A stretch of 64,000 nucleotides of DNA from IMGVR_UViG_3300043399_000297:180023-244022; one strand, 5' to 3'; shown: positions 31,840-47,215, counted from the stretch's first letter. The notes: generated from the letters alone by a model not told the origin. A program made the numbers and translations.

Positions 31840-32217
31840 ATGATTAGGACGATTAACGGTGGTCGTTATATGGTGGTCAACGGTGGAATGCCAGCGACCA
31901 CATATGTCAATAGCTATACAGGCGCTATGTGTCTTGGGGATATGCGATTTAATACTTCTACTCAGAATATAGAAGTGTATGACGGCAATAGTTGGATCCA
32001 GTTAAATATGAGTCACGCTCAGGTTAACTTGACTCCTGATGCTGAAACAGCATTGGATTGGGCTATCAAAAAAGCAACAGAAGATGCTGAACTTGAAAAA
32101 CTAGCAAAAACTAATCCTACTATTGCTGATCTTGTAAACCAAAAGAAAGAAATTGATCAAAAGATTAAAGTCGTACAGACTTTAATCAAAGATGAGGTAA
32201 AAATTGGATCAAATTAA
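31840..32217 (+). CDS. Hypothetical protein
   Basis: GDMRFNTSTQNIEVYDGNSW motif plus coiled-coil. Confidence 0.65.
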   Translation: MIRTINGGRYMVVNGGMPATTYVNSYTGAMCLGDMRFNTSTQNIEVYDGNSWIQLNMSHAQVNLTPDAETALDWAIKKATEDAELEKLAKTNPTIADLVNQKKEIDQKIKVVQTLIKDEVKIGSN

Positions 32218-33832
32218 TCTCTCTGATTATCACAATGATGATTGGGCATTGTTTCTGCCTGCAATCTCGTCCTTCTTCATTAGCGGCTTAGGTAAGCAGC
32301 GTGAAGGTGAAAACTATTTTGACCCTACGAGAATTCCTGCAGGATTTAATGGTGATGTTGAATGTTTGAATTTCTTCAACAGTAAAGCAGGATTATTCAC
32401 ATATAAGTGGGGCTTATATTCTGCTGGTCACGCGAATCTAGATATTACTAAGGATGACAATAACGAATCTATCATCCGCAAAAGAGAAGAAGGTACATTT
32501 CTTCTAGGAGACAGCGGTGGATTCCAGATTCTTAAATGTCAGTGGCCCGCAGATTGGAAGGATCCTAACTGCCCTCGTGCAATGAAGAAAAGAACAGAAG
32601 TTCTTAAGTGGATGGATGAATATATGGACTATGGTATGTGTCTTGATATTCCATCACAGAGCCTGACAACTTATCATATCAAGGATAAGAAGACTAGTAC
32701 CTCGGCACATGGTATCAGCACCATTGAAGAAGCAATTACTGCTACCCATATCAATAACGAATACTTCATCAACAATCGTGATGGTCGCTGCAAGTTCTTA
32801 AATGTTTTGCAGGGCCGCAATCATAAGCAGAGTGATGACTGGTACGAGGAGATGAAGAAGTATTGCGATACCAACATCTATGGGGATCGTGCATTTAATG
32901 GCTGGGCGTTCGGTGGTCAAAACAAGATTGACATTCATTTGATGCTTAAGCGTTTAGTGGGTATTATTCACGATGGTTTCTTAGAAGAAGGCAAGCACGA
33001 CTTAATTCACTGTCTCGGCACTAGTATTATGGAATATGCAGTATTGTTTACTGATATTCAGAAGGCGATTCGCAAATATCATAATAGCAAGTTCAAGATT
33101 ACATTTGATTGTGCAAGCCCATTCTTTGCTGCTGCTAAAGGTCTAGCATACAACAACAATACATTTGAACACGATACAAAGTGGACTTATGCTATGGAGA
33201 AAACTGCTGAGAATAAAAAGTATGCAACTGACAATCGCAAGTATAGTCAAGGTTGCTTAGAAGATAATATTCATCAATTGTTTACTGATAGTCCAATAAC
33301 TGATAGATTGTTGATGAAAGATATCTGCTATCGTGGTGTAGGTTTTCTTGGTCAGCACGGTAAAGAAACTAAGACTAGCTGGGATACTCTTAGCTATACA
33401 TTGATACAAGCACATAATGTCTATCAGCATATCTATGCTGTTCAGGAAGCCAATCGTCGTTACGAGACAGGCATTCTTCCTAATATGGTTATAGACAAGT
33501 TTGATCATACAACTTTTGGTGAAATTGTTGACGAGATTTTTAGCCTTAAAGATAGACAAAGTAGCTTGGATTTGATAGAACATTATAGTAAGTTCTGGAC
33601 TCAGATGAAAGCAGGCCAAGGATTCTCTGGTAAGAAGGCAGTTAATTCTGAAACACAATCTACTGAATTATTCGATGGTAAGTTTGGTTCTAGTAAAGTT
33701 GAAAAAGTAAAGAAGGAGCCACTGAAATCTATGTTTGATGATTTGTTTTCAGTTGATGAAAGTGATATAGAAGTTGATGAAGAAATCATTGATAGCGATG
33801 ATGCTATACAAGATATGGTAGATGAATTATGA
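32204..33832 (+). CDS. dpdA: tRNA-guanine transglycosylase-fold protein, probable DNA 7-deazaguanine transglycosylase (DpdA-like)
   Basis: GDSGGFQ, MCLDIP, NVLQG, GWAFGG, IHCLG, TFDCAS, AHN motifs of the TGT family; clustered with folE/queD/queE. Confidence 0.75.
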   Translation: MDQINLSDYHNDDWALFLPAISSFFISGLGKQREGENYFDPTRIPAGFNGDVECLNFFNSKAGLFTYKWGLYSAGHANLDITKDDNNESIIRKREEGTFLLGDSGGFQILKCQWPADWKDPNCPRAMKKRTEVLKWMDEYMDYGMCLDIPSQSLTTYHIKDKKTSTSAHGISTIEEAITATHINNEYFINNRDGRCKFLNVLQGRNHKQSDDWYEEMKKYCDTNIYGDRAFNGWAFGGQNKIDIHLMLKRLVGIIHDGFLEEGKHDLIHCLGTSIMEYAVLFTDIQKAIRKYHNSKFKITFDCASPFFAAAKGLAYNNNTFEHDTKWTYAMEKTAENKKYATDNRKYSQGCLEDNIHQLFTDSPITDRLLMKDICYRGVGFLGQHGKETKTSWDTLSYTLIQAHNVYQHIYAVQEANRRYETGILPNMVIDKFDHTTFGEIVDEIFSLKDRQSSLDLIEHYSKFWTQMKAGQGFSGKKAVNSETQSTELFDGKFGSSKVEKVKKEPLKSMFDDLFSVDESDIEVDEEIIDSDDAIQDMVDEL

Positions 33833-34290
33833 ATATAGATGACAATATAGAAATGGCCAGAGCTACGCAAAGATTGCGTATTGTTGATCAGGCTAAACGA
33901 ATGATTTGGGTTACCTTTCGTAAAGAAGGAATTCATAAGTATCCTGATGCATTAGAAAACATTGATCTTGCTACAGGGAATGAATACGATGTAAGTTTTC
34001 TTGGATACCCACATAGGCATATCTTTCATTTTAAAGTGGGTATTCAAGTTAAGCACAATGACCGAGAAATTGAGTTCATTCAATTCAAACGCTATCTAGA
34101 AAATCTATATGGCAAGGGAGTTATTGATCTTGATTATCAGTCTTGTGAAATGATTTGTGATAGCTTGTATGAGCATATTGCAAGTCGTTACCCCGAGCGT
34201 GACATTGAAATCACAGTCAGCGAAGACGGTGAGAACGGTGCCACTATTTATTACAACACAACAAAACCTTATCAATCACTTGCCATCTAA
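33829..34290 (+). CDS. QueD-paralog T-fold protein, DpdL-like (putative CDG decarboxylase)
   Basis: LGYPHRHIF fits LxxxHRHxF; SCEM; VSEDGENGA. Confidence 0.6.
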   Translation: MNIDDNIEMARATQRLRIVDQAKRMIWVTFRKEGIHKYPDALENIDLATGNEYDVSFLGYPHRHIFHFKVGIQVKHNDREIEFIQFKRYLENLYGKGVIDLDYQSCEMICDSLYEHIASRYPERDIEITVSEDGENGATIYYNTTKPYQSLAI

Positions 34291-34300
34291 GGAGTATATA

Positions 34301-34522
34301 ATGGCTAAGACTAATATCAATCAGATTTTTGAAGATTTGGACACTCTACGCAATTTTTGCGTAGAATATGGTTATCGCTTTGATGAGCGCGACCTTTATA
34401 ATAACAAGAGCAACACTTATAAGGTGTTCCAGAGACATATGTCCGGGAAGCCAGTTAAGAACAATTGGGAAGCTGACCTAGCAAAGTTTAAGGAACAGGA
34501 AGTTCTAGGGACTCATAGGTAA
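34301..34522 (+). CDS. Hypothetical protein
   Basis: AAGGAG SD before ATG at 34301. Confidence 0.7.
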   Translation: MAKTNINQIFEDLDTLRNFCVEYGYRFDERDLYNNKSNTYKVFQRHMSGKPVKNNWEADLAKFKEQEVLGTHR

Positions 34523-34576
34523 AGTTGTTTGTAATATCTAGTGGCTTCGTTTACAGTTGGTGAAAGAAAATAACAA

Positions 34577-35755
34577 ATGAGAAAACTATTTTATATGGGC
34601 CTTGAAGCCTATAATGCTCGGTATACACTACAATTAACAGAATGGAATCGTCGAGTATTCGCTAGGCGGGGCCTTGATGTAGTGTATGTTTTGGGGCGCG
34701 AACTTGATAACAGTCAGAAGATCGTGACTGGTCAGGTGCTTGATGCACACGGTCGCTCTTACTATGCTATGAGTCAGATGATGAATCTTGTTCAGCTTAT
34801 GCAGCAGGGTGAAGTCACTAGCGAAGACGTAATCTACTTTGAAGATATGTTTCAGCCCGGTTTTGAATCACTGCCCTACATCATTGATCAGCTTCCCGAA
34901 GACAAGTGTCCTCACATCTTTGTTCGTTGTCTAGCACAGACTATTGATCCTGATGATTTTGTCCACGTTTGGGGAATGGATCGTTGGATGAGAGCATATG
35001 AACAAATGGTATGCGCTAGTGTGTCCGGTGTTCTTGCGACTAACGAAGAAATGGTTGCACATATGCGAGTAGCTGGATGGGACGTTCCTATCTATAATAT
35101 CTCAGGTCTTGCATTTGGTAAGGATGAGGTAATTGAAAGAGTAGACAATTATATTCGTCCCTTCAACAGTCGTAGGATGCGTGTAGTATTCTCAGCAAGA
35201 TGGGATCAAGAAAAGCAACCTGATTTCTATATGGATGTTATTGAGGAGTATAGAACTCGTCATCCAAAGGTTGACATTGAGTTTGTTGTTTGTAGTGGAG
35301 GAGAACTTCGTTCAAATAACGAAACTTATATGGCTCGCACTCGCAAGATGGTTGAAGACGGTAAGTTGATTATCTATGATAATCTTGACAAGAACAAGTA
35401 TTATGAGATTCTTAACGAAAGCCGTGTTGTATTCAATTGTGCGTTGCAGGATTGGGTGAGTAACACTGTAAGTGAAGCAGATGCACTGGGATGCAATGTA
35501 TTATACCCTGCCTATCGCAGTTTTCCTGAAACATTTGCCAATGATCACGAAAGAATGTATGTTCCTTGGTCTATTGATGACGCGGTAAATAAGCTTGATG
35601 TATTGTTGAAGAAGGCTCATCCTAATATGGGCAAGATCAGTGATTATACTGATGGAACCATTGATCGTATCTGTGACATTCTTGAGGGTAAGGGTGATCA
35701 ATATCGTCGTTATACTACAGATTATCGTAAGCACACTAGAGAGGCAAAGTATTAA
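34577..35755 (+). CDS. GT-B (GT4-like) glycosyltransferase
   Basis: VVFSARWDQEKQP, FNCALQDWVSNTVSEADALG, YRSFPE. Confidence 0.75.
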   Translation: MRKLFYMGLEAYNARYTLQLTEWNRRVFARRGLDVVYVLGRELDNSQKIVTGQVLDAHGRSYYAMSQMMNLVQLMQQGEVTSEDVIYFEDMFQPGFESLPYIIDQLPEDKCPHIFVRCLAQTIDPDDFVHVWGMDRWMRAYEQMVCASVSGVLATNEEMVAHMRVAGWDVPIYNISGLAFGKDEVIERVDNYIRPFNSRRMRVVFSARWDQEKQPDFYMDVIEEYRTRHPKVDIEFVVCSGGELRSNNETYMARTRKMVEDGKLIIYDNLDKNKYYEILNESRVVFNCALQDWVSNTVSEADALGCNVLYPAYRSFPETFANDHERMYVPWSIDDAVNKLDVLLKKAHPNMGKISDYTDGTIDRICDILEGKGDQYRRYTTDYRKHTREAKY

Positions 35756-35880
35756 TGAATAAGTATGCAGCGTGGCTTCACAAATGGTTTGGTATCCATC
35801 ATTGGGTATTAATTGATAGCTGCGGAACCACTAATCCGCACCGATGCACTATCTGCGGAGAGATAAGGATGATGCGATAA
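35755..35880 (+). CDS. 41-aa His/Cys protein not in the ORF track
   Basis: MNKYAAWLHKWFGIHHW..HRCTICGE; TAATG overlaps at both ends. Confidence 0.55.
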   Translation: MNKYAAWLHKWFGIHHWVLIDSCGTTNPHRCTICGEIRMMR

Positions 35881-36284
35881 TGAAAGTTATCATCGCTGGT
35901 ACTCGTTACAAAGACAAAGAGAATAAGATTCCATTCAATGATTTCAAGTTAGTTCTTGAAGCAGTTGACCGTAGTGGAATAGAACGCAATGGCATTCAAG
36001 TTACTGAAATTGTCTCCGGAAAAGCAATAGGTGTTGATCAGTTAGGTGAACAGTATGCTAATATGCGAGGAATTCCAATTAAGGAAATGCCGGCGGATTG
36101 GAATACATATGGCAAAAGAGCTGGCCCTATTCGCAATCGTCAGATGGCCGAATACGCAGATATAGCAATTATTATATGGGACGGTGAAAGTAACGGAACT
36201 AGAAATATGATCAATGAAATGATTCGCAAGAATAAACCCTATTTCATTGTTATGACCGAATCAAAAGATGTACCACCGGAGTAA
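35880..36284 (+). CDS. SLOG/YspA (DUF2493-like) protein
   Basis: MKVIIAGTR, IVSGKAIGVD, AGPIRNRQMA, WDGESNGT. Confidence 0.8.
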   Translation: MKVIIAGTRYKDKENKIPFNDFKLVLEAVDRSGIERNGIQVTEIVSGKAIGVDQLGEQYANMRGIPIKEMPADWNTYGKRAGPIRNRQMAEYADIAIIIWDGESNGTRNMINEMIRKNKPYFIVMTESKDVPPE

Positions 36285-36624: not shown

Positions 36625-37464
36625 ATGTCACATTACTATGTATATGCTTACCTTGATCCGCGAGAACCGGGCCAATTCATAACTGAGAATATTTCATTTC
36701 TCTACAAACCTTTCTATATAGGAAAGGGCAAAGATGGAAGAATGTACGATCATTTAAAGGATGCTCGTCCTACCCGAAAATTTAAAAACAGCCATAAGCT
36801 TAACACTATCCGGCAAATGTGCGCTGAGGGTATACCACCTACAATCATTAAATTACACGAAGGTCTTACAGAAGATGAGGCTGTGCGAATAGAGGAAACT
36901 TTAATCAAGCGCCTCAAGGAAGAATATGGGTTGACTAATATTAGAACCTCTTCTTGGTCTTCCGGTAATTCTCACAGCAATAGCGGCAAAGAATTCAATA
37001 ATCCTAGAAAAGATACAATAACAATTTACAACACTTTGCTAGGTGAACATACTGTCATTAAAAAACCTCAACTTGGCCTATTCATTGAAATATACGGAAA
37101 AGACAATATAATTAACACTTCTGCTATTAAAACCAGAGTGGGTAAGAAACAAACCAAAGCCAGACACGGAACTACAAATGGAATGTACGGTAAATCCGCA
37201 GTCAGAGGAAAACGATGGTGTATCGTTAACTGTGAGGAAAAGTTTTTATCACCCAAAGAAATTGACAGATACATTGCGCTTGATTATAATGTGGAGTACG
37301 GAAGAAAGTATAAACCTTCCGGAAAGAGAGTTATATTTGAAGGGGAATTAAAGGGTAAATATAGATCGGATGATGACATATCTGCTTTCCCTAACAGAAA
37401 ATATCAGTATGGTTTAGTGTGGAACTCTACTAAACCTACATTTATGAACCATAAACAATTATGA
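36625..37464 (+). CDS. GIY-YIG (LEM-3-like) endonuclease
   Basis: YYVYAYLDPR..PFYIGKGK..RMYDH..EE.LI..LTN; preceded by GATAAATA and hairpin ATGTTGAAAT/ATTTCAACAT. Confidence 0.75.
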   Translation: MSHYYVYAYLDPREPGQFITENISFLYKPFYIGKGKDGRMYDHLKDARPTRKFKNSHKLNTIRQMCAEGIPPTIIKLHEGLTEDEAVRIEETLIKRLKEEYGLTNIRTSSWSSGNSHSNSGKEFNNPRKDTITIYNTLLGEHTVIKKPQLGLFIEIYGKDNIINTSAIKTRVGKKQTKARHGTTNGMYGKSAVRGKRWCIVNCEEKFLSPKEIDRYIALDYNVEYGRKYKPSGKRVIFEGELKGKYRSDDDISAFPNRKYQYGLVWNSTKPTFMNHKQL

Positions 37465-37479: not shown

Positions 37480-38160
37480 GTGAGTTTTGATAAGACTAAA
37501 ACAGACCCTAAGTTGGGAAAGAAGATTAGAGAACACCTTATTAACAAAGGTGTAGAATGCCCTATTGTTGAATCAGCACTTGAAGTAGAAAACAAGAAAA
37601 AAATTGATATTCTTGAAGAGGCATTTACTACTATTTGGAAGACGGTGGGGCTGGATCTGAATGATGATAGTCTTGCGGAAACTCCCAACAGAATGGCCAA
37701 AATGTATATTAATGAGATTTATTTCGGTCTCAAAGAAGAAAACTTCCCCAAATGTACCGTTGTAGAAAACAAGATGGGTCACGATGAAATGGTAGTTGAA
37801 CGCAATGTGGTTGTGATGAGTAACTGTGAACATCACGGCGTTGTCATCGATGGTCTTGCTACCGTTGCATATGTTCCGACTACTAAGGTGCTTGGTCTAT
37901 CAAAGATAAATCGTATCGTTGAATACTTCAGTAAGCGTCCTCAGATTCAGGAACGATTGACCGAGCAGGTGTTCTATGCATTGCAGTATATCCTTGAAAC
38001 AGAGAATGTGGCTGTTATGATTGATGCTAAGCATTATTGCGTAGCCAGCCGTGGCGTTGAAGATACTGGTTCTCGCACTATCACTAGCCGTCTCGGTGGT
38101 GGATTCAAGACTGACCCTGCTGCAAGAGCAGAGTTCCTCAGTATTGCGAGAATGAAATGA
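37480..38160 (+). CDS. folE: GTP cyclohydrolase I
   Basis: ETPNRMAKMY, SNCEHH, GLSKINRIV, RPQIQERLT, HYCVASRG. Confidence 0.95.
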   Translation: MSFDKTKTDPKLGKKIREHLINKGVECPIVESALEVENKKKIDILEEAFTTIWKTVGLDLNDDSLAETPNRMAKMYINEIYFGLKEENFPKCTVVENKMGHDEMVVERNVVVMSNCEHHGVVIDGLATVAYVPTTKVLGLSKINRIVEYFSKRPQIQERLTEQVFYALQYILETENVAVMIDAKHYCVASRGVEDTGSRTITSRLGGGFKTDPAARAEFLSIARMK

Positions 38161-38692: not shown

Positions 38693-38988
38693 CTGACAAA
38701 TACCAAAAAATTATTGATATTATGCGCAAACAGACCGCAGAACGCTTAGCCGATCCTGTTAAACTACGCGAATGGATTCGTCAGGTTCATGGTCCTGAAA
38801 TGCGAGAACTTATTGGTGAAGAGGCAGAGCAAATGCTTGTCGTCCTCAAGTTAGTAGGTCATCATAGTGATTCAAACAATCAAATAACGCATACTTATTT
38901 TTACAAGTATAATGATAAAGAATATAGAATAACATATGGAGCGGGAGACGATCCATTAATAGAAGAGGTATTACCATATGATCTTTAA
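38689..38988 (+). CDS. Hypothetical protein
   Basis: GTGA overlap start after GAGGTGG. Confidence 0.65.
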   Translation: MTDKYQKIIDIMRKQTAERLADPVKLREWIRQVHGPEMRELIGEEAEQMLVVLKLVGHHSDSNNQITHTYFYKYNDKEYRITYGAGDDPLIEEVLPYDL

Positions 38989-40100: not shown

Positions 40101-40143
40101 CGCTCATCCCACTCAAAACATTCTGCGTGTCATCTTATAAGGA
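40089..40143 (+). promoter_or_regulatory. PreQ1-I-like riboswitch candidate (H-type pseudoknot) upstream of queD
   Basis: P1 AGTGG/CCACT, loop ending CATC, A-rich CAAAACA tail, loop TGACGC complementary to GCGTGTCA, then AAGGA SD. Confidence 0.55.
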
Positions 40144-40150
40144 AATAAAG

Positions 40151-40621
40151 ATGGCAAAATATATTAGTACTAAAACATATAACCAAATAGGACCAGTAGC
40201 ATATCGTCAGTGGAAGGCAGATAGCCACTGTAATTTGATTCACGGTTATGCACTTAGTTTTCATTTTGAGTTTGAATCAAATACATTAGACGCAAGAAAC
40301 TGGGTAGTAGACTTTGGTGGATTAAAGCCACTTAAGGCATTGCTTGAAGACTGGTTTGATCACACATTGCTTGTTGCTGTTGATGATCCTCAGCGTGAAG
40401 AACTACTTAGACTAGGTGAGTTGAAGCTTGCTAAGATTACTGAAGTTGAAAAGACAGGATGCGAAGGCATCGCAGACTTTCTTTATGAATATGTGAATAC
40501 TATTTTTCTTCCAACATATGGTTGGGGAGACAATGTTTGGTGTTGTAAGGTAGCAGTACGCGAGACCGACAGCAATATGGCGATGCGTGTTGGTCACAGA
40601 GAAGATAAGGAGTTTGATTAA
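40151..40621 (+). CDS. queD: 6-carboxytetrahydropterin synthase
   Basis: HCNLIHGY, WVVDFGGLK, FDHTLL, GCE, VRET; AAGGA SD supports ATG at 40151. Confidence 0.85.
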   Translation: MAKYISTKTYNQIGPVAYRQWKADSHCNLIHGYALSFHFEFESNTLDARNWVVDFGGLKPLKALLEDWFDHTLLVAVDDPQREELLRLGELKLAKITEVEKTGCEGIADFLYEYVNTIFLPTYGWGDNVWCCKVAVRETDSNMAMRVGHREDKEFD

Positions 40622-41499
40622 TGCCAATTCAACAACAAAAAATTTCAATTTTACTTCCTACTAGAGGAAGGCCTGATCTATTAAAGAGAAGCGTCTTTTC
40701 TCTTTTGGATACTGCAAGTAATACAGACGGTATTGAAATATTGTTGGCAATTGATGATGATGATCCATTGACCATTGATTATGTCAATAATGAATTGGTT
40801 CCAGAATTGAATGACCGCGATGTTGCAATGCGAGCCTTTACATTTAAAAGATTGGGTTATCTTAATCTTCATCTATATGTTAATCATTTAGCCCGTGAAA
40901 GTATGGGTGAGTGGATGATATTATGGAATGATGATGCAGTGATGCAAACTGACAACTGGGACCTTGAAATTGCTAAGTATAATGGACAATTTAAGGTACT
41001 ACGATTTAAAGATAATCATAATGAACACCCTAATGCAATATTTCCTTGCATACCAAAAGACTGGGTAGCATTATTTGATGTTTTGACTCCTCATCAAGTA
41101 ACTGATTCTTGGGTAAGTCAAGTTGCATACATCGTAGGTATCATTCAAAATGTTCCTAGTGTTTATGTTTATCACGATAGACACGATTTGACCGGTAATA
41201 ATAACGATCAAACTGCTCAAGAAAGAATGTTTGACGATAATAATCCACACCAACCCACTGATTTGAATCACCCTGACCAATTAAGGTTGAAGTTAGCGTG
41301 GGGTAAGAAACTGAATTGGTATCTACAAAGAATTGGACAGAGCCCGGGCTGGCTAGATCAGTGGTTAAAGGATCCAAAAAACTTTGACTTGTGGTCTACA
41401 TTCAAAGAAAACGACCCGAATAATCAATGTTTTACTAGTTTGGAAGAAAGAGAAGAAATTGTCAAGAATAAAAAGAATTTGGTTCAAGGCTCTGGGTGA
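40621..41499 (+). CDS. GT-A (GT2-like) glycosyltransferase
   Basis: ISILLPTRGRP, EILLAIDDDD, WNDD. Confidence 0.8.
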   Translation: MPIQQQKISILLPTRGRPDLLKRSVFSLLDTASNTDGIEILLAIDDDDPLTIDYVNNELVPELNDRDVAMRAFTFKRLGYLNLHLYVNHLARESMGEWMILWNDDAVMQTDNWDLEIAKYNGQFKVLRFKDNHNEHPNAIFPCIPKDWVALFDVLTPHQVTDSWVSQVAYIVGIIQNVPSVYVYHDRHDLTGNNNDQTAQERMFDDNNPHQPTDLNHPDQLRLKLAWGKKLNWYLQRIGQSPGWLDQWLKDPKNFDLWSTFKENDPNNQCFTSLEEREEIVKNKKNLVQGSG

Positions 41500-41623: not shown

Positions 41624-41855
41624 GATATATTCTAGTTGGAGTACCTCTCCTATAGGAAAAGCATCTAGATGGAAATTAGTATTAGCCAAATTTTGGTTTC
41701 TCACGCATCCATATATTAGTGTTACTCCTAGTTCAAGTACTTCCGGTTGGGGATTTGACAAAACACCCTACGGATTCATTCTTTGGTTACCCGGAAAGAA
41801 ACATAAAAGGTGTGGAAAAAGAATTCATATTTCTTGGAGAATGTTAATTGATTAA
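41616..41855 (+). CDS. Hypothetical protein
   Basis: 79 aa, overlaps its neighbours by a few nt. Confidence 0.5.
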   Translation: MVKIYSSWSTSPIGKASRWKLVLAKFWFLTHPYISVTPSSSTSGWGFDKTPYGFILWLPGKKHKRCGKRIHISWRMLID

Positions 41856-42351
41856 AAAAGTATATTACACAGACAAACAGATTGACGCATTGATTCATAA
41901 CATCCTTCGTCAGATCATAAAGGATCAGTGGGTGCCTGACTATATCGTGGGTCTTACTCGCGGCGGTCTAGTTCCCGCAGTCAAGATCAGTCAGTATCTT
42001 GACATTCCATTAGAAACTGTTAAAGTCAGTTTGCGTGACGGAAGTGATGATGGGTGTGAAAGTAACTGTTGGATGGCAGAAGATGCATACGATGGTAAGA
42101 AGATTCTCATTGTTGATGACATTAACGATACTGGTGCTACATTAGAATGGATCAAGAAAGATTGGCAATCAAGTGCATTCCCCGGTGATGAAAAATGGGA
42201 TGGTATTTGGAATGAAAGTGTTCGCTTTGCAGCATTGATTGACAATGATCAAAGTTTAACGCAGATAAATTATATTGGTAAGAGTATCAACAAGGCTGAA
42301 GATCCACACTGGGTAATTTTTCCTTGGGAAAATTGGTGGGAAAATGACTGA
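41848..42351 (+). CDS. Type I purine phosphoribosyltransferase (Gpt-like)
   Basis: GLTRGGLVPA, ILIVDDINDTGAT PRPP motif, WVIFPWE. Confidence 0.88.
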   Translation: MIKKVYYTDKQIDALIHNILRQIIKDQWVPDYIVGLTRGGLVPAVKISQYLDIPLETVKVSLRDGSDDGCESNCWMAEDAYDGKKILIVDDINDTGATLEWIKKDWQSSAFPGDEKWDGIWNESVRFAALIDNDQSLTQINYIGKSINKAEDPHWVIFPWENWWEND

Positions 42352-42514
42352 CTTAATTATAGTTATAAGTGTTTCTGTATTGTGCGCTATACTTTCTTTT
42401 ATTGTGTATGGATGTTGGCGTTGGGAACAAGATAGATATGAATATAGAAAAAAGTATGGGATTGATCCCAAATATCACGGTTGGAAAATAGATGACAAAA
42501 ATCAAGATAAGTGA
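42344..42514 (+). CDS. 56-aa membrane protein not in the ORF track
   Basis: MTDLIIVISVSVLCAILSFIVYGCW... Confidence 0.55.
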   Translation: MTDLIIVISVSVLCAILSFIVYGCWRWEQDRYEYRKKYGIDPKYHGWKIDDKNQDK

Positions 42515-43361
42515 ATTATTTTACTCAATCCAAGGTGAGGGTAGATATATGGGAGTCCCAAGTATCTTCCTGAGAACATTTGGATGCAACTTTACTTGTA
42601 GCGGCTTTGGAATGCCAAAAGGAGAATTATCAAATGAGCGGGAAAAAATTGAAGCAAACGAATACAACGAATACGGACAGCTTCCTCTCGTCACTACGGG
42701 CTGCGACTCCTACGCATCCTGGGATCCTCGCTTCAAGCATCTTTCTCCCAGCAGGGACATTGATACTATTGTCAGCGACATTATGGAACTACTACCGTTT
42801 AAAGAATGGAAAGAAGAACACCTCGTCATCACAGGAGGAGAACCACTCCTCGGATGGCAACGATCCTACCCAGAACTCTTAAGTCACGAAAAGATGAAAA
42901 GTCTCAGAGAGATTACCTTTGAGACAAACGGCACACAACCGATTACAGATGAGTTTATCAAATATCTTGACGATTGGCGTTGGGAAGCTGTTCTGGGTGA
43001 AAAGACTGGCTATGCATTTGATCGTGAGATTACATTTAGCGTAAGTCCCAAACTATCTTGTTCCGGACATACTACAGAAGAAGCTATCAAGCCCGAGGTA
43101 GTGTGCCGGTATGAAGATGTTGGTTATACCTATCTCAAGTTTGTTATCGCAACAGAAGACGATGCTAATGAAGCATTAGAAATGATTAAGCGTTATCGTC
43201 AAGAAGGCTTTATAGGTCCTGTTTACTTTATGCCTGTCGGCGGAGTAGAGAGTGTATATCATCTTAACAATCGCACAGTTGCAGACCTTGCTATAAAAAA
43301 TGGTGTTCGTTATAGTGATCGGCTGCATTTGCCATTGTTCGGCAACAGGTGGGGTACCTAA
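42492..43361 (+). CDS. queE: 7-carboxy-7-deazaguanine synthase (radical SAM)
   Basis: ELFYSIQGEG, FLRTFGCNFTC..CDS, ITGGEP, ETNGT, SPKL, RLH. Confidence 0.9.
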   Translation: MTKIKISELFYSIQGEGRYMGVPSIFLRTFGCNFTCSGFGMPKGELSNEREKIEANEYNEYGQLPLVTTGCDSYASWDPRFKHLSPSRDIDTIVSDIMELLPFKEWKEEHLVITGGEPLLGWQRSYPELLSHEKMKSLREITFETNGTQPITDEFIKYLDDWRWEAVLGEKTGYAFDREITFSVSPKLSCSGHTTEEAIKPEVVCRYEDVGYTYLKFVIATEDDANEALEMIKRYRQEGFIGPVYFMPVGGVESVYHLNNRTVADLAIKNGVRYSDRLHLPLFGNRWGT

Positions 43362-43378
43362 ATAGTAAAAGTTTATTA

Positions 43379-43425
43379 CCCCTCGTATTGTATAAATAAT
43401 GAAGACTATTTAATAATACGAGGGG
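43379..43425 (+). promoter_or_regulatory. RBS-sequestering hairpin with a late promoter in its loop
   Basis: CCCCTCGTATT...TATAAATA(43391-43398)...AATACGAGGGG then ATG 43429. Confidence 0.75.
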
Positions 43426-43428
43426 AAT

Positions 43429-44184
43429 ATGACAAATCCTATTAATAAGAAAACCACAGAACAGTTCATAAGCGAAGTAAATCCGGAATTAGGTATTACG
43501 ATATTAGGAGAGTATCTTAATACCGACACCAAGATTGAATATCAATGTAAGCACGGGACCTTCTATTCATTGCCTTGGCAAATATTAAAGTTAAAACATT
43601 GTTGTCGCAAGGGATATTACGAAAGTGGCAAGATGTGGGAAAAAAGAACCAACACCTTGTTTGAACTCAAGAACAGGGCTCTTAAGGACAGACCCAACAT
43701 TGATGTTACAGAGTGTTATATTGACACTTCCGGAAGATACAAAAGATTAGCAAATATTAGATGCACCAAACATAATGTATATTATAGTTCTATAGCAAGT
43801 AACAAGATGGGACAATGCCCTGAATGTTACAAAGAAGACAATATGGAACGCCTAAAGTTAGCGCAGGTTGCGGCATGGACAAGTCAGTCGGTCGGTAGTT
43901 TTGTTAGTGACAGTGAAACAAAATGGTTAGATTCTTTGGGGATTAAAGGTAGACAAGTATGGTTAAAGGATGTACAATACAAAGTAGACGGGTATGACGA
44001 GACCACAAACACTGTTTATTTATACCATGGTAGATTTTGGCATGGGTGTCCAGAAACATTTGATCCAAACTTGATTCATCCGGTAGTGAAGATACCGATG
44101 AAGGATTTATATGAGAAAACGATTATGTATGAAAATAAGATCAAAGATGCAGGGTACAACCTCGTAGTAGAGTGGGGAAGATAA
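43429..44184 (+). CDS. Vsr/EDxHD-like endonuclease with Zn-binding repeats
   Basis: Cys/His repeats; C-terminal SDSE..WLD..KVDGYD..YLYHGRFWHG..GYNLVVEW. Confidence 0.7.
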   Translation: MTNPINKKTTEQFISEVNPELGITILGEYLNTDTKIEYQCKHGTFYSLPWQILKLKHCCRKGYYESGKMWEKRTNTLFELKNRALKDRPNIDVTECYIDTSGRYKRLANIRCTKHNVYYSSIASNKMGQCPECYKEDNMERLKLAQVAAWTSQSVGSFVSDSETKWLDSLGIKGRQVWLKDVQYKVDGYDETTNTVYLYHGRFWHGCPETFDPNLIHPVVKIPMKDLYEKTIMYENKIKDAGYNLVVEWGR

Positions 44185-44245
44185 TGTTACGTCTAGAATA
44201 TCCAATTGGGTTGACAAGTATGAATATATTAAATGGAAGTTAAAA

Positions 44246-45019
44246 ATGACTGATAACTTAGAACAAAAGATTGTTGACTATTGGAATCGTCAACCCTGTA
44301 ACATTAAGCATAGTACCAGTGAGATTGGTACACTAGAGTTCTTTGAAGAAAACTCTAACAAGCGATATAAGGTCGAGCCACATCTCCGTGAACTTGCGCA
44401 ATTCCACTTATATCAAGGCAAACGAGTGCTTGAAATTGGTTGTGGGTTAGGCGCAGATGCAGCAGAATTTGTGAAAAACGGTGCTGAATATGTGGGAATT
44501 GACATTAGTGACGAAAGTGTTAAGCTTGCACAAAAGCGTTTTGAAGTAATGGGATTGCAAGGTCAATTTTTTGTTGACAACGCAATTAATGACCTATCTA
44601 AATATGGCAAGTTTGATCTTGTTTATAGTTGCGGTGTGCTACATCATTATCCGGATATTCAAAAGATTTTTAATAACATTCATAATGTTTTAGTTGACGG
44701 CGGTGATTTGAGATTTTTTGTTTACGCAAAGAATAGCTGGAAATATGCTATGATTAAAGCTGGATTAGATCAATATGAGGCTCAAGCAGGATGCCCATAT
44801 GCAAAAGCATATACGCACGATGAAATTTATGAATTGCTTGAAGGTAAGTTTGAAATAGCAAGAATACGCCAAGCTCATTGTTTTATGTGGAATGTAGAAA
44901 AATACAAACAACATATCTATGAACTTGAACCCTGGTTTGCAGCAATGTCTACTGAAATGCGAGAGGCAGTGAGTGAATACCTAGGTTGGCATCTATTAGT
45001 AAAAGCAAATAAGATATGA
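44246..45019 (+). CDS. Class I SAM-dependent methyltransferase
   Basis: VLEIGCGLG, GIDIS, FDLVYSCGVLHH. Confidence 0.85.
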   Translation: MTDNLEQKIVDYWNRQPCNIKHSTSEIGTLEFFEENSNKRYKVEPHLRELAQFHLYQGKRVLEIGCGLGADAAEFVKNGAEYVGIDISDESVKLAQKRFEVMGLQGQFFVDNAINDLSKYGKFDLVYSCGVLHHYPDIQKIFNNIHNVLVDGGDLRFFVYAKNSWKYAMIKAGLDQYEAQAGCPYAKAYTHDEIYELLEGKFEIARIRQAHCFMWNVEKYKQHIYELEPWFAAMSTEMREAVSEYLGWHLLVKANKI

Positions 45020-46344
45020 AAAGAATCGGATTCCTAGTTAGTTCGCAGACATTAATACCGCACGGTGGTATTGGTCAATTCACAAAAAGTTTCTGCGAGT
45101 TAATGAATAGTCAAGGACTATATGTGGATGTTATCACCGATAAAAGCCCTCAAGGTATTGCGGATGATTTTGTTAGAGAACTCAAAGCAAATATCATCTA
45201 TCCAGACAATCCATTAAAATACACTGACCACAGTGCCATCTTTATGTATGGTGATAGTTATTGCTATGAGCGTATGGCTAACTTTCGTGATGCTACTATT
45301 AAGGCTCTTACATCTAACTTGTATGATGTTTTTGTTTGCAATACATACGAGACTATTCAGGTAATATCTACTCTCGGATTAACAGATTATATCCAAACCA
45401 TTGCATATACCCATTTGGAAAGTCAAATCTTCAAGGATACTAAGAATCCTTTCTTAGATAGTGTCAACGATATGATGAGGTTGCAATTACAGATGCCAAA
45501 CATCACTATCGGCACTCAAAGTGTGTTCAATCGTCTTCGTTTTGAAAATGCATATCATCTACCCATTCCTCTCCCCGAACCAAACTTGTTGAAAGAATAC
45601 GATAAAAATCGTGAAGGTGTGTTGTTCATCGGTCGTTGGGAAGAAGGTAAGAATCCCGAGTTGTTTCTTGACTTGATTGAGCAGACTAGACTTCCCGCTC
45701 GTATTATGACTAGTAGCAATGGTGCTAAAAAGTTTGATGAGAGACTAAAGAAGCTTGGAGTTGACTATCAGATTAAAGTTGGAATCATTGGGCAGGAAAA
45801 GGTAGATTTTATCACTGGATGTAGAGTAGCTTTTAATCCAAGCACGGTAGAAAGTTATGGAATTGCTTTTCTAGAACAGATTATTCAATTGCCTACATTT
45901 GCGTTAATCAACCAGCGTTGGACAGATAATTTCCCAAGCACACAATTTTTTACGACAAGTAAGCGTAATATGGCTGAGGATGTAAAAAAAGTTTATGATC
46001 AGTATCCTACTGCAAAAGATTGGTATAAAGAATATGACTCAGTGAACCATTTTAAAGTTCACGAAGAGGCGGTGTTTCATAAGTGGAATCATTGCTTCAA
46101 TGAATTTGAATCTCGCAAGAGTAATAGTAATACTGCTAAGATTTGCAATGAAACCACCGTCAAATATAGCGATTACATCACTGACTTAAAGCGTAGAATC
46201 ATTTGTATTGACGATGTGAAAAGTGTATTGTCCAATAAACATAAGTTTAGAGTAATATACACTGACACTGATACTTATTTGACAAAGGACCCTTCTTTTG
46301 AACCCAAAGAAGAAGTAATAGGAACAGGATTGTTTGAGTTTTGA
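45016..46344 (+). CDS. GT-B (GT4-like) glycosyltransferase
   Basis: PHGGIG, LFIGRWEEGKNP, NPSTVESYGIAFLE. Confidence 0.8.
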   Translation: MKRIGFLVSSQTLIPHGGIGQFTKSFCELMNSQGLYVDVITDKSPQGIADDFVRELKANIIYPDNPLKYTDHSAIFMYGDSYCYERMANFRDATIKALTSNLYDVFVCNTYETIQVISTLGLTDYIQTIAYTHLESQIFKDTKNPFLDSVNDMMRLQLQMPNITIGTQSVFNRLRFENAYHLPIPLPEPNLLKEYDKNREGVLFIGRWEEGKNPELFLDLIEQTRLPARIMTSSNGAKKFDERLKKLGVDYQIKVGIIGQEKVDFITGCRVAFNPSTVESYGIAFLEQIIQLPTFALINQRWTDNFPSTQFFTTSKRNMAEDVKKVYDQYPTAKDWYKEYDSVNHFKVHEEAVFHKWNHCFNEFESRKSNSNTAKICNETTVKYSDYITDLKRRIICIDDVKSVLSNKHKFRVIYTDTDTYLTKDPSFEPKEEVIGTGLFEF

Positions 46345-46345
46345 T

Positions 46346-47215
46346 ATGAAAAAGATACTAGTTACTGGAAGTTCAGGGTATATTGGTTCGCACCTTTGTA
46401 AGTTGCTTGAGAAGGATTATATAGTTCACGGACTTGATATTCGTGAGCCACAACATCCAGTCAAGGAATTCTACAAGATTGATATTAATCGTCCTTTTGA
46501 TTCAGACGAGGAATACGATGCAGTTATTCATCTTGCTGCATTAGTTAATATTTCTGAAAGCGAAAAGCACCCCATAATTCATTATATTACCAATTTAAAC
46601 GGAACAATGAATGTAATCAATAGGATAAAGACTAAGAACTTTATCTTTGCATCTACTGGAGCGGCTGTATTATGTGATAGTGCATATGGAATTAGCAAGA
46701 GAGCAGCAGAAGATGTAGTAAGAGAATATTGCACAGAACACGACAACATTCCATATACCATTTTTAGATTTTACAATGTAATTGGTACAAGCGGGTATGG
46801 TCCTACTAATATAGATGGACTTATGTATAATTTAATGAAGATGAGAGAGACTAGAGAATTCACTATATATGGTAACGATTATCCTACTGGGTTTGACGGA
46901 ACCTGTGTTAGAGATTATGTTCACGTTGACGAAATCTGTTATGCGCTTAAGCTAGCAATTGAAAAGCCAGCTAACACTGTTGAATCGTTAGGACACGGTG
47001 TGGGATATAGTGTCAAGGAAATCTTTGAGATTTTTGAAAGAGTGAATCAAAATTATCTGTATCCCACTGGAGAAGAAGATGCTATCACAATGAAGATAGG
47101 TCCTCGCAGAAAGGGAGACACTCCCCATAGCGTTTTGGAAGATGTGTCTAAATATATGGTTGATATGTTTACGATAGATGAGCTTTTAAAGGTTGACACA
47201 CTCACTAAACAATGA
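46346..47215 (+). CDS. NAD-dependent nucleotide-sugar epimerase (GalE-like)
   Basis: ILVTGSSGYIG, IHLAA, YGISK, FRFYNV, DGTCVRDYVHV, RRKGD. Confidence 0.88.
   Translation: MKKILVTGSSGYIGSHLCKLLEKDYIVHGLDIREPQHPVKEFYKIDINRPFDSDEEYDAVIHLAALVNISESEKHPIIHYITNLNGTMNVINRIKTKNFIFASTGAAVLCDSAYGISKRAAEDVVREYCTEHDNIPYTIFRFYNVIGTSGYGPTNIDGLMYNLMKMRETREFTIYGNDYPTGFDGTCVRDYVHVDEICYALKLAIEKPANTVESLGHGVGYSVKEIFEIFERVNQNYLYPTGEEDAITMKIGPRRKGDTPHSVLEDVSKYMVDMFTIDELLKVDTLTKQ

What the first reader, a model, noticed from the sequence alone, without database searches (positions are those of the whole stretch)
32204..47215. 7-deazaguanine DNA-modification cluster interleaved with sugar-transfer enzymes: possible glycosylated deazaguanine base
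Seen: TGT-fold DpdA-like gene directly downstream of the polB-clamp block, a T-fold LxxxHRHxF protein, FolE, QueD and QueE. Interspersed are three glycosyltransferases (34577, 40621, 45016), a cytidylyltransferase, a GalE-like epimerase and a SAM methyltransferase. Established: FolE-QueD-QueE make CDG, and DpdA proteins insert deazaguanines into phage DNA; from recall, QueD paralogs with LxxxHRHxF (DpdL) are linked to dDG. Inference: the GT-B enzyme close behind dpdA/dpdL and the nucleotide-sugar enzymes could hypermodify dCDG/dDG (or another base) with a sugar, a modification I do not know to be described. The GTs could instead glycosylate virion or host-surface components.
Basis: partly seen in the sequence, partly recalled or inferred. 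Interest (0 to 1): 0.72.

Follow-up and report, generated by a model that had tools for sequence, protein, structure and literature searches.

The report
Glycosyltransferase-coupled 7-deazaguanine DNA modification cluster
A freshwater jumbo-phage contig carries a queC-less 7-deazaguanine DNA-modification cluster containing a sugar-transferring enzyme that, across about 200 loci in phages and 3 in bacteria, lies beside one kind of DNA base-swapping enzyme, which points to an undescribed sugar-bearing deazaguanine, though no chemistry has been measured.

Summary
The window encodes a TGT-fold DpdA (32204-33832), a DpdL with the exact LxxxHRHxF motif, FolE, QueD and QueE. It also encodes three glycosyltransferases, a sugar-phosphate nucleotidyltransferase, a GalE-like epimerase and a SAM methyltransferase. 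No QueC was found.

The key result is comparative. The GT-B enzyme at 34577-35755 ("GTB1", retaining GT4 fold) belongs to a family found almost only inside DpdL/DpdA clusters.
- It lies next to DpdL in PA5oct, ACP17, BUCT-ZZ01, X1/BUDD, BCSR5 and Phosso.
- It is present in 172 of 173 evaluable metagenomic or isolate loci that hold a long-form DpdA.
- It is absent from all 6 loci with the short DpdA3, including phiST, the only DpdL phage with measured DNA (plain dDG).
- In three bacterial genomes the pair GTB1 + DpdA sits beside a YhhQ-family deazapurine transporter, without DpdL.

GTB1 is therefore a dedicated partner of this DpdA. It most likely makes a glycosylated 7-deazaguanine. Whether it acts before or after insertion into DNA, the attachment atom and the sugar are all unknown.

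A second GT-B (45016) is also inside BUCT-ZZ01's cluster. The GT-A and the sugar-nucleotide genes are lineage-specific. No paper found describes such a base.

The parts
28314..31031 (+). Family-B DNA polymerase. Context only: it begins the conserved order PolB-clamp-x-DpdA-DpdL-GTB1.
   Evidence: Pfam DNA_pol_B 7e-39. The gene order is conserved in 80 related contigs.
31047..31838 (+). Sliding-clamp-like protein (context).
   Evidence: No Pfam hit. It is homologous to the Phosso gene annotated as sliding clamp beta and to a PA5oct gene.
32204..33832 (+). DpdA-like DNA transglycosylase, long form 'type a'. It has a TGT-fold core (about residues 1-470) and an acidic disordered tail.
   Evidence: AlphaFold2 pLDDT 88. 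Foldseek top 50 are all TGT. GDSGGFQ motif and invariant Asp residues. hhalign 96.7% to ACP17 DpdA.
33829..34290 (+). DpdL, the T-fold QueD paralogue proposed to be a CDG decarboxylase.
   Evidence: FLGYPHRHIF motif. phrog_17812 at 1e-32. Homologous to phiST and ACP17 DpdL.
34302..34522 (+). Small ORF (73 aa) between DpdL and GTB1, function unknown.
   Evidence: Read from the sequence. No family hit for the longer frame 34157-34522.
34577..35755 (+). GTB1: a GT-B glycosyltransferase of retaining GT4 type, the conserved partner of long-form DpdA.
   Evidence: AlphaFold2 pLDDT 83. Foldseek matches MshA, BshA and PimA at E 1e-12. Family-wide synteny.
35844..36284 (+). SLOG/YAcAr-family protein (predicted nucleotide-binding). 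Its link to the pathway is unproven.
   Evidence: Pfam YAcAr 1e-9; phrog_289. Present in only 2 of 207 GTB1 loci.
36625..37464 (+). GIY-YIG homing-endonuclease-like insert.
   Evidence: Pfam LEM-3_GIY-YIG 4e-13. Present in only 2 of 80 related loci.
37480..38160 (+). FolE, GTP cyclohydrolase I.
   Evidence: Pfam 3e-58.
38978..39451 (+). Small sugar- or polyol-phosphate nucleotidyltransferase. It is a candidate maker of the glycosyl donor.
   Evidence: Pfam CTP_transf_like. NCBIfam rfaE_dom_II 82 bits and TagD 63 bits, both below their cut-offs. It often lies directly between DpdL and GTB1 in relatives.
39663..40100 (+). GGACT/AIG2-like protein, role unknown.
   Evidence: Pfam GGACT 2e-7.
40127..40621 (+). 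QueD-like CPH4 synthase.
   Evidence: Pfam PTPS 5e-15; phrog_2389 9e-40.
40621..41499 (+). GT-A (GT2-like) glycosyltransferase whose start overlaps the QueD stop. It is an accessory specific to this lineage.
   Evidence: Pfam GT2 0.002; phrog_14945 7e-17. The QueD-GT2 adjacency is seen in 9 of 80 relatives. Isolate-phage homologues are unrelated to deazaguanine genes.
41848..42351 (+). Purine phosphoribosyltransferase (Gpt/Hpt-like).
   Evidence: Pfam Pribosyltran 2e-18; NCBIfam xanthine PRTase. It lies next to QueE in PA5oct and BUCT-ZZ01 and occurs in 54 of 207 GTB1 loci.
42492..43361 (+). QueE, radical-SAM CDG synthase.
   Evidence: phrog_2076 4e-56; Pfam Radical_SAM.
43429..44184 (+). HNH-type homing-endonuclease-like insert.
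   Evidence: phrog_559 and phrog_681.
44246..45019 (+). Class I SAM methyltransferase (closest to small-molecule O-methyltransferases), overlapping GTB2.
   Evidence: Pfam Methyltransf_12/25/11; NCBIfam UbiG-like. Present in 5 of 207 GTB1 loci.
45016..46344 (+). GTB2: a second GT-B glycosyltransferase.
   Evidence: Pfam GT1 2e-4. It is 42% identical over 435 aa to a BUCT-ZZ01 gene lying between FolE and DpdA. Atlas neighbours are GT4.
46334..47215 (+). GalE-like NDP-sugar epimerase or dehydratase.
   Evidence: Pfam Epimerase 8e-33; NCBIfam galE 138 bits, below cut-off. It lies directly after GTB1 in many relatives.
55682..56623 (+). PP-loop ATPase of the AsnB/QueC-like kind. A possible accessory acting on the CDG carboxylate; unproven.
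   Evidence: QueC HMM 16 bits over the N-terminal PP-loop only. Atlas structural neighbours are Asn_synthase/QueC proteins. It lies between FolE and QueD in L090.

Best explanation
The region is a queC-less 7-deazaguanine DNA-modification system of a previously undescribed architecture.

Proposed pathway:
1. FolE, QueD and QueE make CDG from GTP. This step is established chemistry.
2. DpdL converts CDG to 7-deazaguanine. This was proposed in the literature and is consistent with dDG in phiST.
3. A long-form TGT-fold DpdA exchanges guanine in phage DNA for the deazaguanine. This is inferred from the fold and the gene context.
4. A dedicated retaining GT4-type glycosyltransferase (GTB1) attaches a sugar to the deazaguanine. 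It co-inherits with this DpdA type in phages and bacteria. This step is inferred.

The end product would be a glycosylated deazaguanine in DNA.

My leaning is that GTB1 acts on the free base, as HuiG does in huimycin synthesis, and that the long DpdA inserts the glycosylated base. Post-insertion glycosylation of DNA is the close alternative.

Accessory genes in this phage:
- The nucleotidyltransferase and epimerase plausibly supply the donor sugar.
- GTB2, the GT-A and the methyltransferase plausibly extend or decorate the sugar.
- The Gpt-like PRTase plausibly salvages the guanine that DpdA releases.
For: The parts are real:
- DpdA has a TGT fold and the GDSGGFQ motif.
- DpdL has the LxxxHRHxF motif.
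- FolE, QueD and QueE are present.
- GTB1 has a GT4 fold. It keeps an invariant R...EK motif and the second Glu of an E/D-x7-E motif.

GTB1 is tied to the cluster:
- It lies next to DpdL and DpdA in seven isolate-phage lineages.
- Of 57 IMG/VR loci recruited through the GT alone, 49 hold DpdL within 10 kb. Seven of the other eight have the GT within about 1 kb of a contig end; L128 has full flanks and no DpdL.
- GTB1 and DpdL are less than 1 kb apart in 166 of 199 loci.

GTB1 follows the DpdA type:
- Long DpdA goes with GTB1 in 172 of 173 evaluable loci. DpdA3 goes with GTB1 in 0 of 6.
- Whole-genome searches, with positive controls, confirm this.
- DpdL sequences from both architectures are interleaved in the tree, so the modules were exchanged repeatedly.
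- Three bacterial islands hold a YhhQ-family transporter, GTB1 and DpdA without DpdL.

Other support:
- No QueC in five complete genomes that carry GTB1.
- No hydroxymethyl-pyrimidine route. ThyA is canonical (PFNIASY) and lies beside DHFR.
- PA5oct carries the same module. Its DNA resists restriction enzymes in a pattern pointing to modified G, and its chemistry is undetermined (PMC12191111).
- ACP17 dpdA + dpdL expressed without the GT gave no dDG in E. coli (PMC10516641).
- Precedent: HuiG, a GT4-domain enzyme, glycosylates a 7-deazapurine base using UDP-GlcNAc (bioRxiv 10.64898/2026.04.15.718813).
Against: - No chemical data exist for any phage that carries GTB1.
- 7-Deazaguanine offers no hydroxyl, which is the usual acceptor of retaining GT4 enzymes. 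N-, C- or O6-glycosylation would have to be assumed.
- GTB1 is acidic (family median pI 5.6) and lacks conserved basic residues in its N-terminal domain. This fits DNA binding poorly.
- A TGT pocket would have to accept a glycosylated base, which is not known to occur.
- Structure search does not place GTB1 near the T4 DNA glucosyltransferases. Pfam QTMAN_N is not matched.
- Complex prediction of DpdA + DpdL + GTB1 gave no answer.
- Many of the counted loci are related to one another. There are about 28 DpdL clusters at 70% identity that carry GTB1.
- One locus (L209) has long DpdA and DpdL but no GTB1 within 10 kb.
Confidence: 0.55

Rival explanations
1. This is a plain dDG (or dCDG) system as in phiST. 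GTB1 has a role linked to DpdA that leaves no sugar on the final DNA base. For example, it could glycosylate DpdA or another protein, or make a transient glycosylated intermediate or carrier form of the base that is removed on insertion.
For: - DpdL is orthologous in both architectures, and phiST DNA holds plain dDG (PMC10516641).
- GTB1 is acidic and resembles small-molecule GT4 enzymes.
- DG has no obvious hydroxyl acceptor.
Against: - DpdA3 systems work without any such GT.
- No deglycosylating enzyme is conserved in the module.
- GTB1 is under strong conservation, 83-89% identity across the lineage, which is higher than for DpdA.
- PA5oct is attacked by END nucleases, which in that study restricted only hypermodified phages.
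Confidence: 0.2
2. The glycosyltransferases and sugar-nucleotide genes glycosylate virion proteins or host surface polymers. They sit among the deazaguanine genes only because this is the early/replication gene block.
For: - GT-A (40621) homologues occur in Pelagibacter and Streptomyces phages with no deazaguanine context.
- The epimerase, nucleotidyltransferase, methyltransferase, GT-A and GTB2 are present in only some of the loci.
- GTB2 homologues in Xanthomonas phages lie about 40 kb (X1) and about 157 kb (BUDD) from the cluster, and Erwinia jumbo phages also carry homologues.
Against: - For GTB1 this fails. The family is essentially confined to DpdA/DpdL clusters in unrelated phage backbones: T4-like phages, jumbo phages, and bacterial islands that hold no virion genes.
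- GTB2 lies between FolE and DpdA in BUCT-ZZ01.
- The nucleotidyltransferase and epimerase often directly flank GTB1.
Confidence: 0.15
3. A nucleotide-level route operates. The PRTase converts the deazaguanine base to a nucleotide, which is incorporated by the adjacent PolB. The 'DpdA' and the GT then have other roles.
For: - A purine PRTase is conserved beside QueE in several lineages.
- Tubercidin biosynthesis uses a PRTase on CDG.
- The PolB-DpdA synteny is conserved.
Against: - The PRTase is present in only 54 of 207 GTB1 loci and is absent from the ACP17 operon.
- DpdA is retained everywhere.
- Guanine salvage explains the PRTase more simply.
Confidence: 0.07

Closest known systems
Cellulophaga phage phiST dDG system (FolE-QueD-QueE-DpdL-DpdA3; Cui et al. 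2023, PMC10516641)
   Same: - Same queC-less biosynthetic core.
- DpdL is orthologous and carries LxxxHRHxF.
   Different: - phiST uses the short DpdA3 (259 aa) with a kinase-like gene and MazG, and it has no GT.
- The window uses a 542-aa DpdA of another subfamily. hhalign gives only 66% probability to DpdA3.
- The window adds GTB1.
Acidovorax phage ACP17 and Pseudomonas jumbo phage PA5oct clusters
   Same: - Same module: long DpdA, GTB1, DpdL, QueE and FolE.
- PA5oct also has the PRTase and the PolB-clamp synteny.
   Different: - Neither phage has been analysed chemically.
- The GT in them is annotated as a hypothetical protein and was not discussed in the papers read.
- They lack the window's extra GT-A, GTB2, methyltransferase and nucleotidyltransferase.
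HuiG of huimycin biosynthesis (glycosylation of a 7-deazapurine base)
   Same: A GT4-domain glycosyltransferase that uses an NDP-sugar on a 7-deazaguanine-derived free base, accompanied by a SAM methyltransferase.
   Different: - It belongs to a secondary-metabolite pathway with QueC and no DpdA, and its product is not placed in DNA.
- Direct homology to GTB1 was not tested.
T4 alpha- and beta-glucosyltransferases (5-hmC DNA glucosylation)
   Same: - GT-B fold.
- Phage-encoded sugar hypermodification of a non-canonical base that counters restriction.
   Different: - They are not among the 50 best structural matches of GTB1.
- The acceptor route is absent here, because ThyA is canonical.
- GTB1 is acidic.
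QTMAN/GTDC1 (mannosyl-queuosine in tRNA)
   Same: - A GT4 enzyme that glycosylates a 7-deazaguanine derivative in a nucleic acid.
- QTMAN clusters appear among the Atlas language-model neighbours of GTB1.
   Different: - The defining QTMAN_N domain (PF12038) is not matched by any of 7 family members.
- Its acceptor hydroxyls (the cyclopentenediol) cannot be made by this cluster.
Bacterial Dpd system (dpdA-K; dPreQ0/dADG)
   Same: - A DpdA-type transglycosylase inserting a deazaguanine into DNA.
- The bacterial relatives of this module sit in defence islands.
   Different: - The bacterial GTB1 loci hold a YhhQ-like transporter, GTB1 and DpdA only.
- Homologues of DpdB, DpdC or the restriction components were not looked for.

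Membership tests
DpdA (TGT-fold DNA deazaguanine transglycosylase) | TGT (TIM-barrel transglycosylase) fold | tested here: met
   AlphaFold2 pLDDT 88 and pTM 0.85. The Foldseek PDB top 50 are all TGT, at E about 1e-7 and probability 1.00.
DpdA (TGT-fold DNA deazaguanine transglycosylase) | Catalytic Asp in a DSGGFQ-type motif, plus further conserved Asp residues | tested here: met
   GDSGGFQ at residues 102-108. D103, S104, G106, D148 and D302 are invariant in 57 homologues. The assignment of catalytic roles rests on my knowledge of Zymomonas TGT, not on a residue-level superposition.
DpdA (TGT-fold DNA deazaguanine transglycosylase) | Sequence-level membership (Pfam TGT PF01702, or similarity to solved TGTs) | tested here: not met
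   No Pfam, PHROG or PDB sequence hit with the single sequence or with the profile. Recognised phage DpdAs of the ACP17/X1 type also miss Pfam TGT.
DpdA (TGT-fold DNA deazaguanine transglycosylase) | Homology to a DpdA already accepted in the literature | tested here: met
   hhalign gives 96.7% probability (E 4e-10) to ACP17 DpdA, and 66% to phiST DpdA3. Which named subfamily (DpdA1-4) it belongs to could not be settled, because the paper's supplement is not held.
DpdA (TGT-fold DNA deazaguanine transglycosylase) | Base-exchange activity on DNA | not testable with these tools
   Needs an enzyme assay or nucleoside analysis of the DNA.
DpdL (proposed CDG decarboxylase) | LxxxHRHxF in place of the QueD motif CxxxHGH | tested here: met
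   FLGYPHRHIF. H62, H64 and F66 are invariant in 12 DpdLs.
DpdL (proposed CDG decarboxylase) | Occurs with FolE, QueD, QueE and a DpdA, without QueC | tested here: met
   No QueC in five complete related genomes. The window's own contig is only 71% complete.
DpdL (proposed CDG decarboxylase) | Decarboxylase activity | not testable with these tools
   This activity has also not been shown experimentally in the literature (PMC10516641).
Retaining GT4-type GT-B glycosyltransferases | Two-Rossmann GT-B fold closest to GT4 members | tested here: met
   Model pLDDT 83. MshA, BshA, PimA and OtsA match at E 1e-12 to 1e-9 with TM up to 0.68.
Retaining GT4-type GT-B glycosyltransferases | Pfam Glycos_transf_1 C-terminal domain with donor-binding R/K and the E-x7-E glutamate | tested here: met
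   All 7 family members match PF00534, best E 8e-12; the window's own protein is below the cut-off. R208, K213, K272 and E300 are invariant in 38 sequences.
Retaining GT4-type GT-B glycosyltransferases | Identity of the donor and the acceptor | not testable with these tools
   Needs biochemistry.
T4-type DNA glucosyltransferases | Closest structural kinship to T4 AGT or BGT, and a hydroxymethyl-pyrimidine acceptor pathway | tested here: not met
   Neither enzyme is in the top 50 PDB matches. ThyA is canonical and lies beside DHFR.
QTMAN (tRNA-queuosine mannosyltransferase) | QTMAN_N domain (PF12038) | tested here: not met
   0 of 7 family members match at E <= 1. The only link is language-model similarity.
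phiST-type dDG system | DpdA3 transglycosylase with a neighbouring kinase-like gene | tested here: not met
   DpdA3 and dNMP-kinase profiles hit only the loci that lack GTB1. The window has the long DpdA.
HuiG-like deazapurine glycosyltransferases | Sequence homology to HuiG | not tested
The analogy rests on the paper.

The most novel reading that the evidence does not exclude
Phages of many lineages (PA5oct-like, ACP17-like, T4-like cyanophages, Xanthomonas and Burkholderia phages, and this abundant freshwater jumbo lineage), and some bacteria, carry a glycosylated 7-deazaguanine in their DNA. That would be the first sugar-bearing purine analogue known in any genome. It would be made by a two-enzyme core of a long-form DpdA plus a GT4-type glycosyltransferase. 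The sugar could be put on the free base before the transglycosylase inserts it, which is a mode of DNA hypermodification not seen before. In this phage the sugar would be extended or methylated by further enzymes.
Probability: 0.45. Interest if true: 0.9.

Novelty: new variant of a known kind. Interest (0 to 1): 0.8.

Why it matters
All glycosylated DNA bases known so far are pyrimidines: glucosyl- or arabinosyl-hmC, and base J. The eight known deazaguanine DNA bases carry only small substituents.

A conserved glycosyltransferase tied to one class of DpdA would add a new chemical class of DNA modification. It would also explain two open observations:
- PA5oct behaves as a "hypermodified G" phage.
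- ACP17 dpdA + dpdL alone failed to reconstitute dDG.

It would also give a genomic marker (long DpdA + GTB1) for predicting the modification in hundreds of uncultured phages and in some bacterial defence islands.

This bears on restriction, CRISPR and END-nuclease evasion, on the sequencing behaviour of such DNA, and on enzyme tools for DNA labelling. Several carriers are cultured phages, so the question can be tested directly.

Tried and rejected
- **Near-identical DNA in isolate phages.** None found.
- **Sequence and profile searches of DpdA against Pfam, PHROGs and PDB.** No TGT hit. Only structure and hhalign reach it.
- **QTMAN lead from the Atlas.** Not supported by Pfam.
- **T4-like DNA glucosyltransferase kinship.** Not supported by fold search.
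- **hmC or hmU as the sugar acceptor.** Rejected: ThyA is canonical and lies beside DHFR.
- **QueC elsewhere.** Only a 16-bit PP-loop match, in a 313-aa AsnB/QueC-like protein. No homologue in isolate phages.
- **Complex prediction of DpdA + DpdL + GTB1.** No answer, so it is neither support nor evidence against.
- **The search for related loci with the 7-member GT alignment.** It was redone with three sequences.
- **Sequencing runs.** Only two runs of the same freshwater sample hold the region, and they are kept as contigs. No read-level evidence of modification was possible, and read laying was not used.
- **Supplementary tables of Cui et al. 2023.** Not held.
- **One literature search.** Wasted on the ambiguous term 'dDG'.

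Full report
**Where the window lies.** The window is the last 64 kb of a 244,022-bp IMG/VR viral contig. CheckV estimates it as 71% complete. It comes from a freshwater metagenome. The lineage is very abundant. The DpdA-like and GT proteins each have thousands of metagenomic relatives at 70-89% identity, on contigs of up to about 360 kb.

**Checking the observation.** All genes lie on the + strand.
- Pfam, PHROGs and NCBIfam confirm PolB (28314), FolE (37480), a QueD-like PTPS (40127), QueE (42492), a small nucleotidyltransferase (38978; closest to RfaE domain II or TagD), a class I SAM methyltransferase (44246) and a GalE-like epimerase (46334).
- The three glycosyltransferases (34577, 40621, 45016) give weak but consistent signals.

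**The 542-aa ORF at 32204 is a DpdA.** It has no sequence-level family hit at all. With a 57-sequence alignment it folds confidently (pLDDT 88), and its 50 best PDB matches are all tRNA-guanine transglycosylases. It carries GDSGGFQ, and three Asp residues are invariant. Profile comparison links it to the ACP17 DpdA at 96.7% probability and only weakly to phiST DpdA3 at 66%.

**The 153-aa ORF at 33829 is a DpdL.** It has FLGYPHRHIF, exactly the DpdL signature. It is homologous to the DpdL genes of phiST and ACP17.

**What is known.** Cui et al. 2023 (PMC10516641) showed that phiST, which has FolE, QueD, QueE, DpdL and DpdA3 but no QueC, replaces G completely by dDG. DpdL is a proposed CDG decarboxylase that has not been demonstrated. 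Co-expressing dpdL and dpdA of phiST or ACP17 in E. coli gave no dDG, and the authors noted that other enzymes may be required. PA5oct DNA resists several restriction enzymes in a pattern suggesting modified G, and END nucleases restrict it, but its modification has not been identified (PMC12191111). I found no paper describing a glycosylated deazaguanine in DNA.

**The main finding: the GT-B behind dpdL is part of the system.**
- tblastn and HMM searches place a GTB1 homologue within the deazaguanine cluster of seven isolate lineages. These are PA5oct-like Pseudomonas jumbo phages (DpdA-GT-DpdL), ACP17 (DpdA-GT-DpdL-QueE, with abutting or overlapping ORFs), the cyanophage BUCT-ZZ01 (63% identity; DpdA-DpdL-GT), Xanthomonas X1/BUDD, Burkholderia BCSR5 and Sinorhizobium Phosso.
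- In 80 contigs of the window's own lineage the core order is PolB-clamp-x-DpdA-DpdL-GTB1-FolE.
- I then recruited 57 IMG/VR loci through the GT alone, at 31-49% identity to the ACP17 enzyme. Of these, 49 have DpdL within 10 kb. Of the other eight, seven have the GT within about 1 kb of a contig end. L128 has full flanks and no other cluster gene.
- Over all 207 loci with GTB1, DpdL is present in 199, and it is less than 1 kb away in 166.

**GTB1 follows the type of DpdA.** Five isolate phages with DpdL have no GTB1 anywhere in their genomes: phiST, RHph_I1_18, Ahp1, D479 and Bakedbeans. All five carry a homologue of phiST DpdA3 instead, usually beside a dNMP-kinase-like gene.

| Architecture (loci with enough flanking sequence) | GTB1 present |
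|---|---|
| Long DpdA, type a (window, PA5oct) or type b (ACP17, BUCT-ZZ01, X1, BCSR5) | 172 of 173 |
| DpdA3 | 0 of 6 |

The 12 other apparent absences are contig ends less than 900 bp after DpdL, and L209 is the one real exception. In a DpdL tree the DpdA3 rows are scattered among the GTB1 rows. For example, Ahp1 is sister to a GT-carrying contig with 100/97 support. DpdL is therefore one function, and the two insertion modules were exchanged repeatedly. The loci are not all independent. They fall into 35 DpdL clusters at 70% identity, of which 28 have GTB1 only and 6 lack it.

**Bacterial relatives.** A scan of 185,579 species genomes found three loci, in Azospirillum isscasi, a Rhizobiales isolate and Ochrobactrum sp. 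MYb379. In each, GTB1 lies beside a type-a DpdA and a Vut_1/YhhQ-family protein, which is the family of the preQ0 transporter. No DpdL, FolE, QueD or QueE lies within 10 kb. The loci sit in islands with integrases, GmrSD, Mrr and AAA_15 genes. The minimal module is therefore DpdA + GTB1 plus a supply of base.

**What GTB1 looks like.** The model (pLDDT 83) is a GT-B fold. It is closest to retaining GT4 enzymes that act on small acceptors, namely MshA, BshA, PimA and OtsA at E down to 1e-12. T4 AGT and BGT do not appear among the matches. The donor-side residues R208, E212-K213, K272 and E300 are conserved. The N-terminal domain has a family-specific LEPxExRYT motif and mostly acidic or aromatic invariant residues. 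The family is acidic, with median pI 5.6. Pfam QTMAN_N is not matched, although QTMAN clusters appear among language-model neighbours.

**Other possible acceptors and QueC.** The genome's only thymidylate-synthase homologue is canonical (PPCH, PFNIASY) and lies beside DHFR, so a hydroxymethyl-pyrimidine acceptor is unlikely. No QueC is present in the contig or in the complete genomes of PA5oct, BUCT-ZZ01, ACP17, BCSR5 and Phosso. A 313-aa PP-loop protein at 55682 is AsnB/QueC-like by structure neighbours. In one relative it lies between FolE and QueD, but it has no homologue in isolate phages. It remains an open lead.

**The other sugar genes.**
- GTB2 (45016) has a 42%-identical homologue between FolE and DpdA in BUCT-ZZ01 and in two similar contigs. 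Its homologues in Xanthomonas phages lie about 40 kb (X1) and about 157 kb (BUDD) from the cluster, and Erwinia jumbo phages also have homologues.
- The nucleotidyltransferase and the epimerase often flank GTB1 directly in relatives, as DpdL-CTPt-GTB1 and GTB1-Epim-FolE. This suggests they supply the donor sugar.
- The GT-A overlaps the QueD stop codon and keeps that position in 9 of 80 relatives. Its isolate-phage homologues have no deazaguanine context.
- The methyltransferase is rare, in 5 of 207 loci.
- These genes are therefore accessories specific to this lineage, and a virion or surface role cannot be excluded for them.

**Mechanism.**
- *Shown here:* the parts, their folds and their co-inheritance.
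- *Established elsewhere:* FolE, QueD and QueE make CDG, and TGT-fold DpdAs exchange G for deazaguanines.
- *Inferred:* DpdL gives DG, the long DpdA inserts the base, and GTB1 glycosylates it.

Two orders of events are possible. A free-base route is favoured by four points: the small-molecule GT4 neighbours, the acidic protein, the co-variation with DpdA type, and the overlap of transporter and GT genes in bacteria. It also has a precedent in HuiG, a GT4-domain enzyme that glycosylates a 7-deazapurine base with UDP-GlcNAc, alongside a SAM methyltransferase. A DNA-level route follows the T4 paradigm. Complex prediction gave no answer.

The Gpt-like PRTase is conserved beside QueE in several lineages. 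It is most simply read as salvage of the guanine released by base exchange. A nucleotide-level route is a minor rival.

**Verdict.** This is a new variant of a known kind of system, and the predicted product, a sugar-bearing deazaguanine in DNA, has not been described. Several carriers are cultured phages, so it can be tested directly.

Noticed in passing
L231:7902-11103; L232 and L233 about 8000-11050: Three bacterial genomes (Azospirillum isscasi, Rhizobiales bacterium AFS055504, Ochrobactrum sp. MYb379) carry an adjacent trio of YhhQ/Vut_1-family transporter, GTB1 and type-a DpdA. The trio sits in islands with integrase, GmrSD, Mrr_cat and AAA_15 genes. This looks like an undescribed bacterial deazaguanine DNA-modification module.
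   Followed up: partly
window 55682-56623 (+): A 313-aa viral PP-loop ATPase whose structural neighbours are asparagine-synthase and QueC-like enzymes. In contig L090 its homologue lies between FolE and QueD. It could amidate or otherwise activate the CDG carboxylate, which would change the predicted base.
   Followed up: partly
window 41848-42351 (+); L002:15925-16359; L003:4093-4554: A Gpt/Hpt-like purine phosphoribosyltransferase is conserved beside QueE in distant phages and occurs in 54 of 207 GTB1 loci. It may recycle guanine released by DpdA back to GTP, or make a deazaguanine nucleotide.
   Followed up: partly
window 36625-37464, 43429-44184, 53054-53653 (-): GIY-YIG and HNH homing-endonuclease-like genes interrupt the cluster. 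In PA5oct the PolB gene itself is split by a Hef-like homing endonuclease (L002:7988-9670).
   Followed up: no
window 40127-40621; L003:4884-5351; L004:5801-6277: The QueD proteins of these phages read C-x3-H-G-Y where the published QueD signature is CxxxHGH, so the second zinc histidine of the motif is replaced by Tyr.
   Followed up: no
window 33620-33832 (DpdA residues about 473-542): DpdA ends in a low-confidence, strongly acidic tail (DESDIEVDEEIIDSDDAIQD). It could mimic DNA or dock a partner.
   Followed up: no
L012:11236-12387: In Vibrio phage Bakedbeans the DpdL domain is the C-terminal third of a 383-aa ORF (gp176). This suggests a fusion with an unknown N-terminal domain.
   Followed up: no
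L009:12408-13232 and 14071-15339: Rhizobium phage RHph_I1_18 has a macro-domain (Appr-1-p processing) gene directly after DpdL. Its DpdA3-like protein carries a DUF3310 domain.
   Followed up: no
window 48254-48736 (+): A 160-aa protein of unknown function has homologues directly downstream of QueE in PA5oct, in Phosso and in about 11 of the 80 contigs scanned. It may belong to the module or to the replication genes that follow it.
   Followed up: no
L209 (IMGVR_UViG_3300020477_000990, 31887-52243): This is the only evaluable locus with long DpdA and DpdL but no GTB1, FolE or QueE within 10 kb downstream. The cluster may be rearranged, or it may be a natural GT-less variant useful as a control.
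   Followed up: no
G000:C1:101053-103204 (L150:1031-3182): DHFR, a canonical ThyA and a 262-aa putative class I methyltransferase (judged by eye from its translation; no family search was run) form a tight gene string outside the window.
   Followed up: partly
window 47193-48257, 58867-60198, 62262-63461: A UvdE UV-damage endonuclease, an ATP-dependent DNA ligase and a ClpX-like AAA+ unfoldase lie downstream of the cluster.
   Followed up: no
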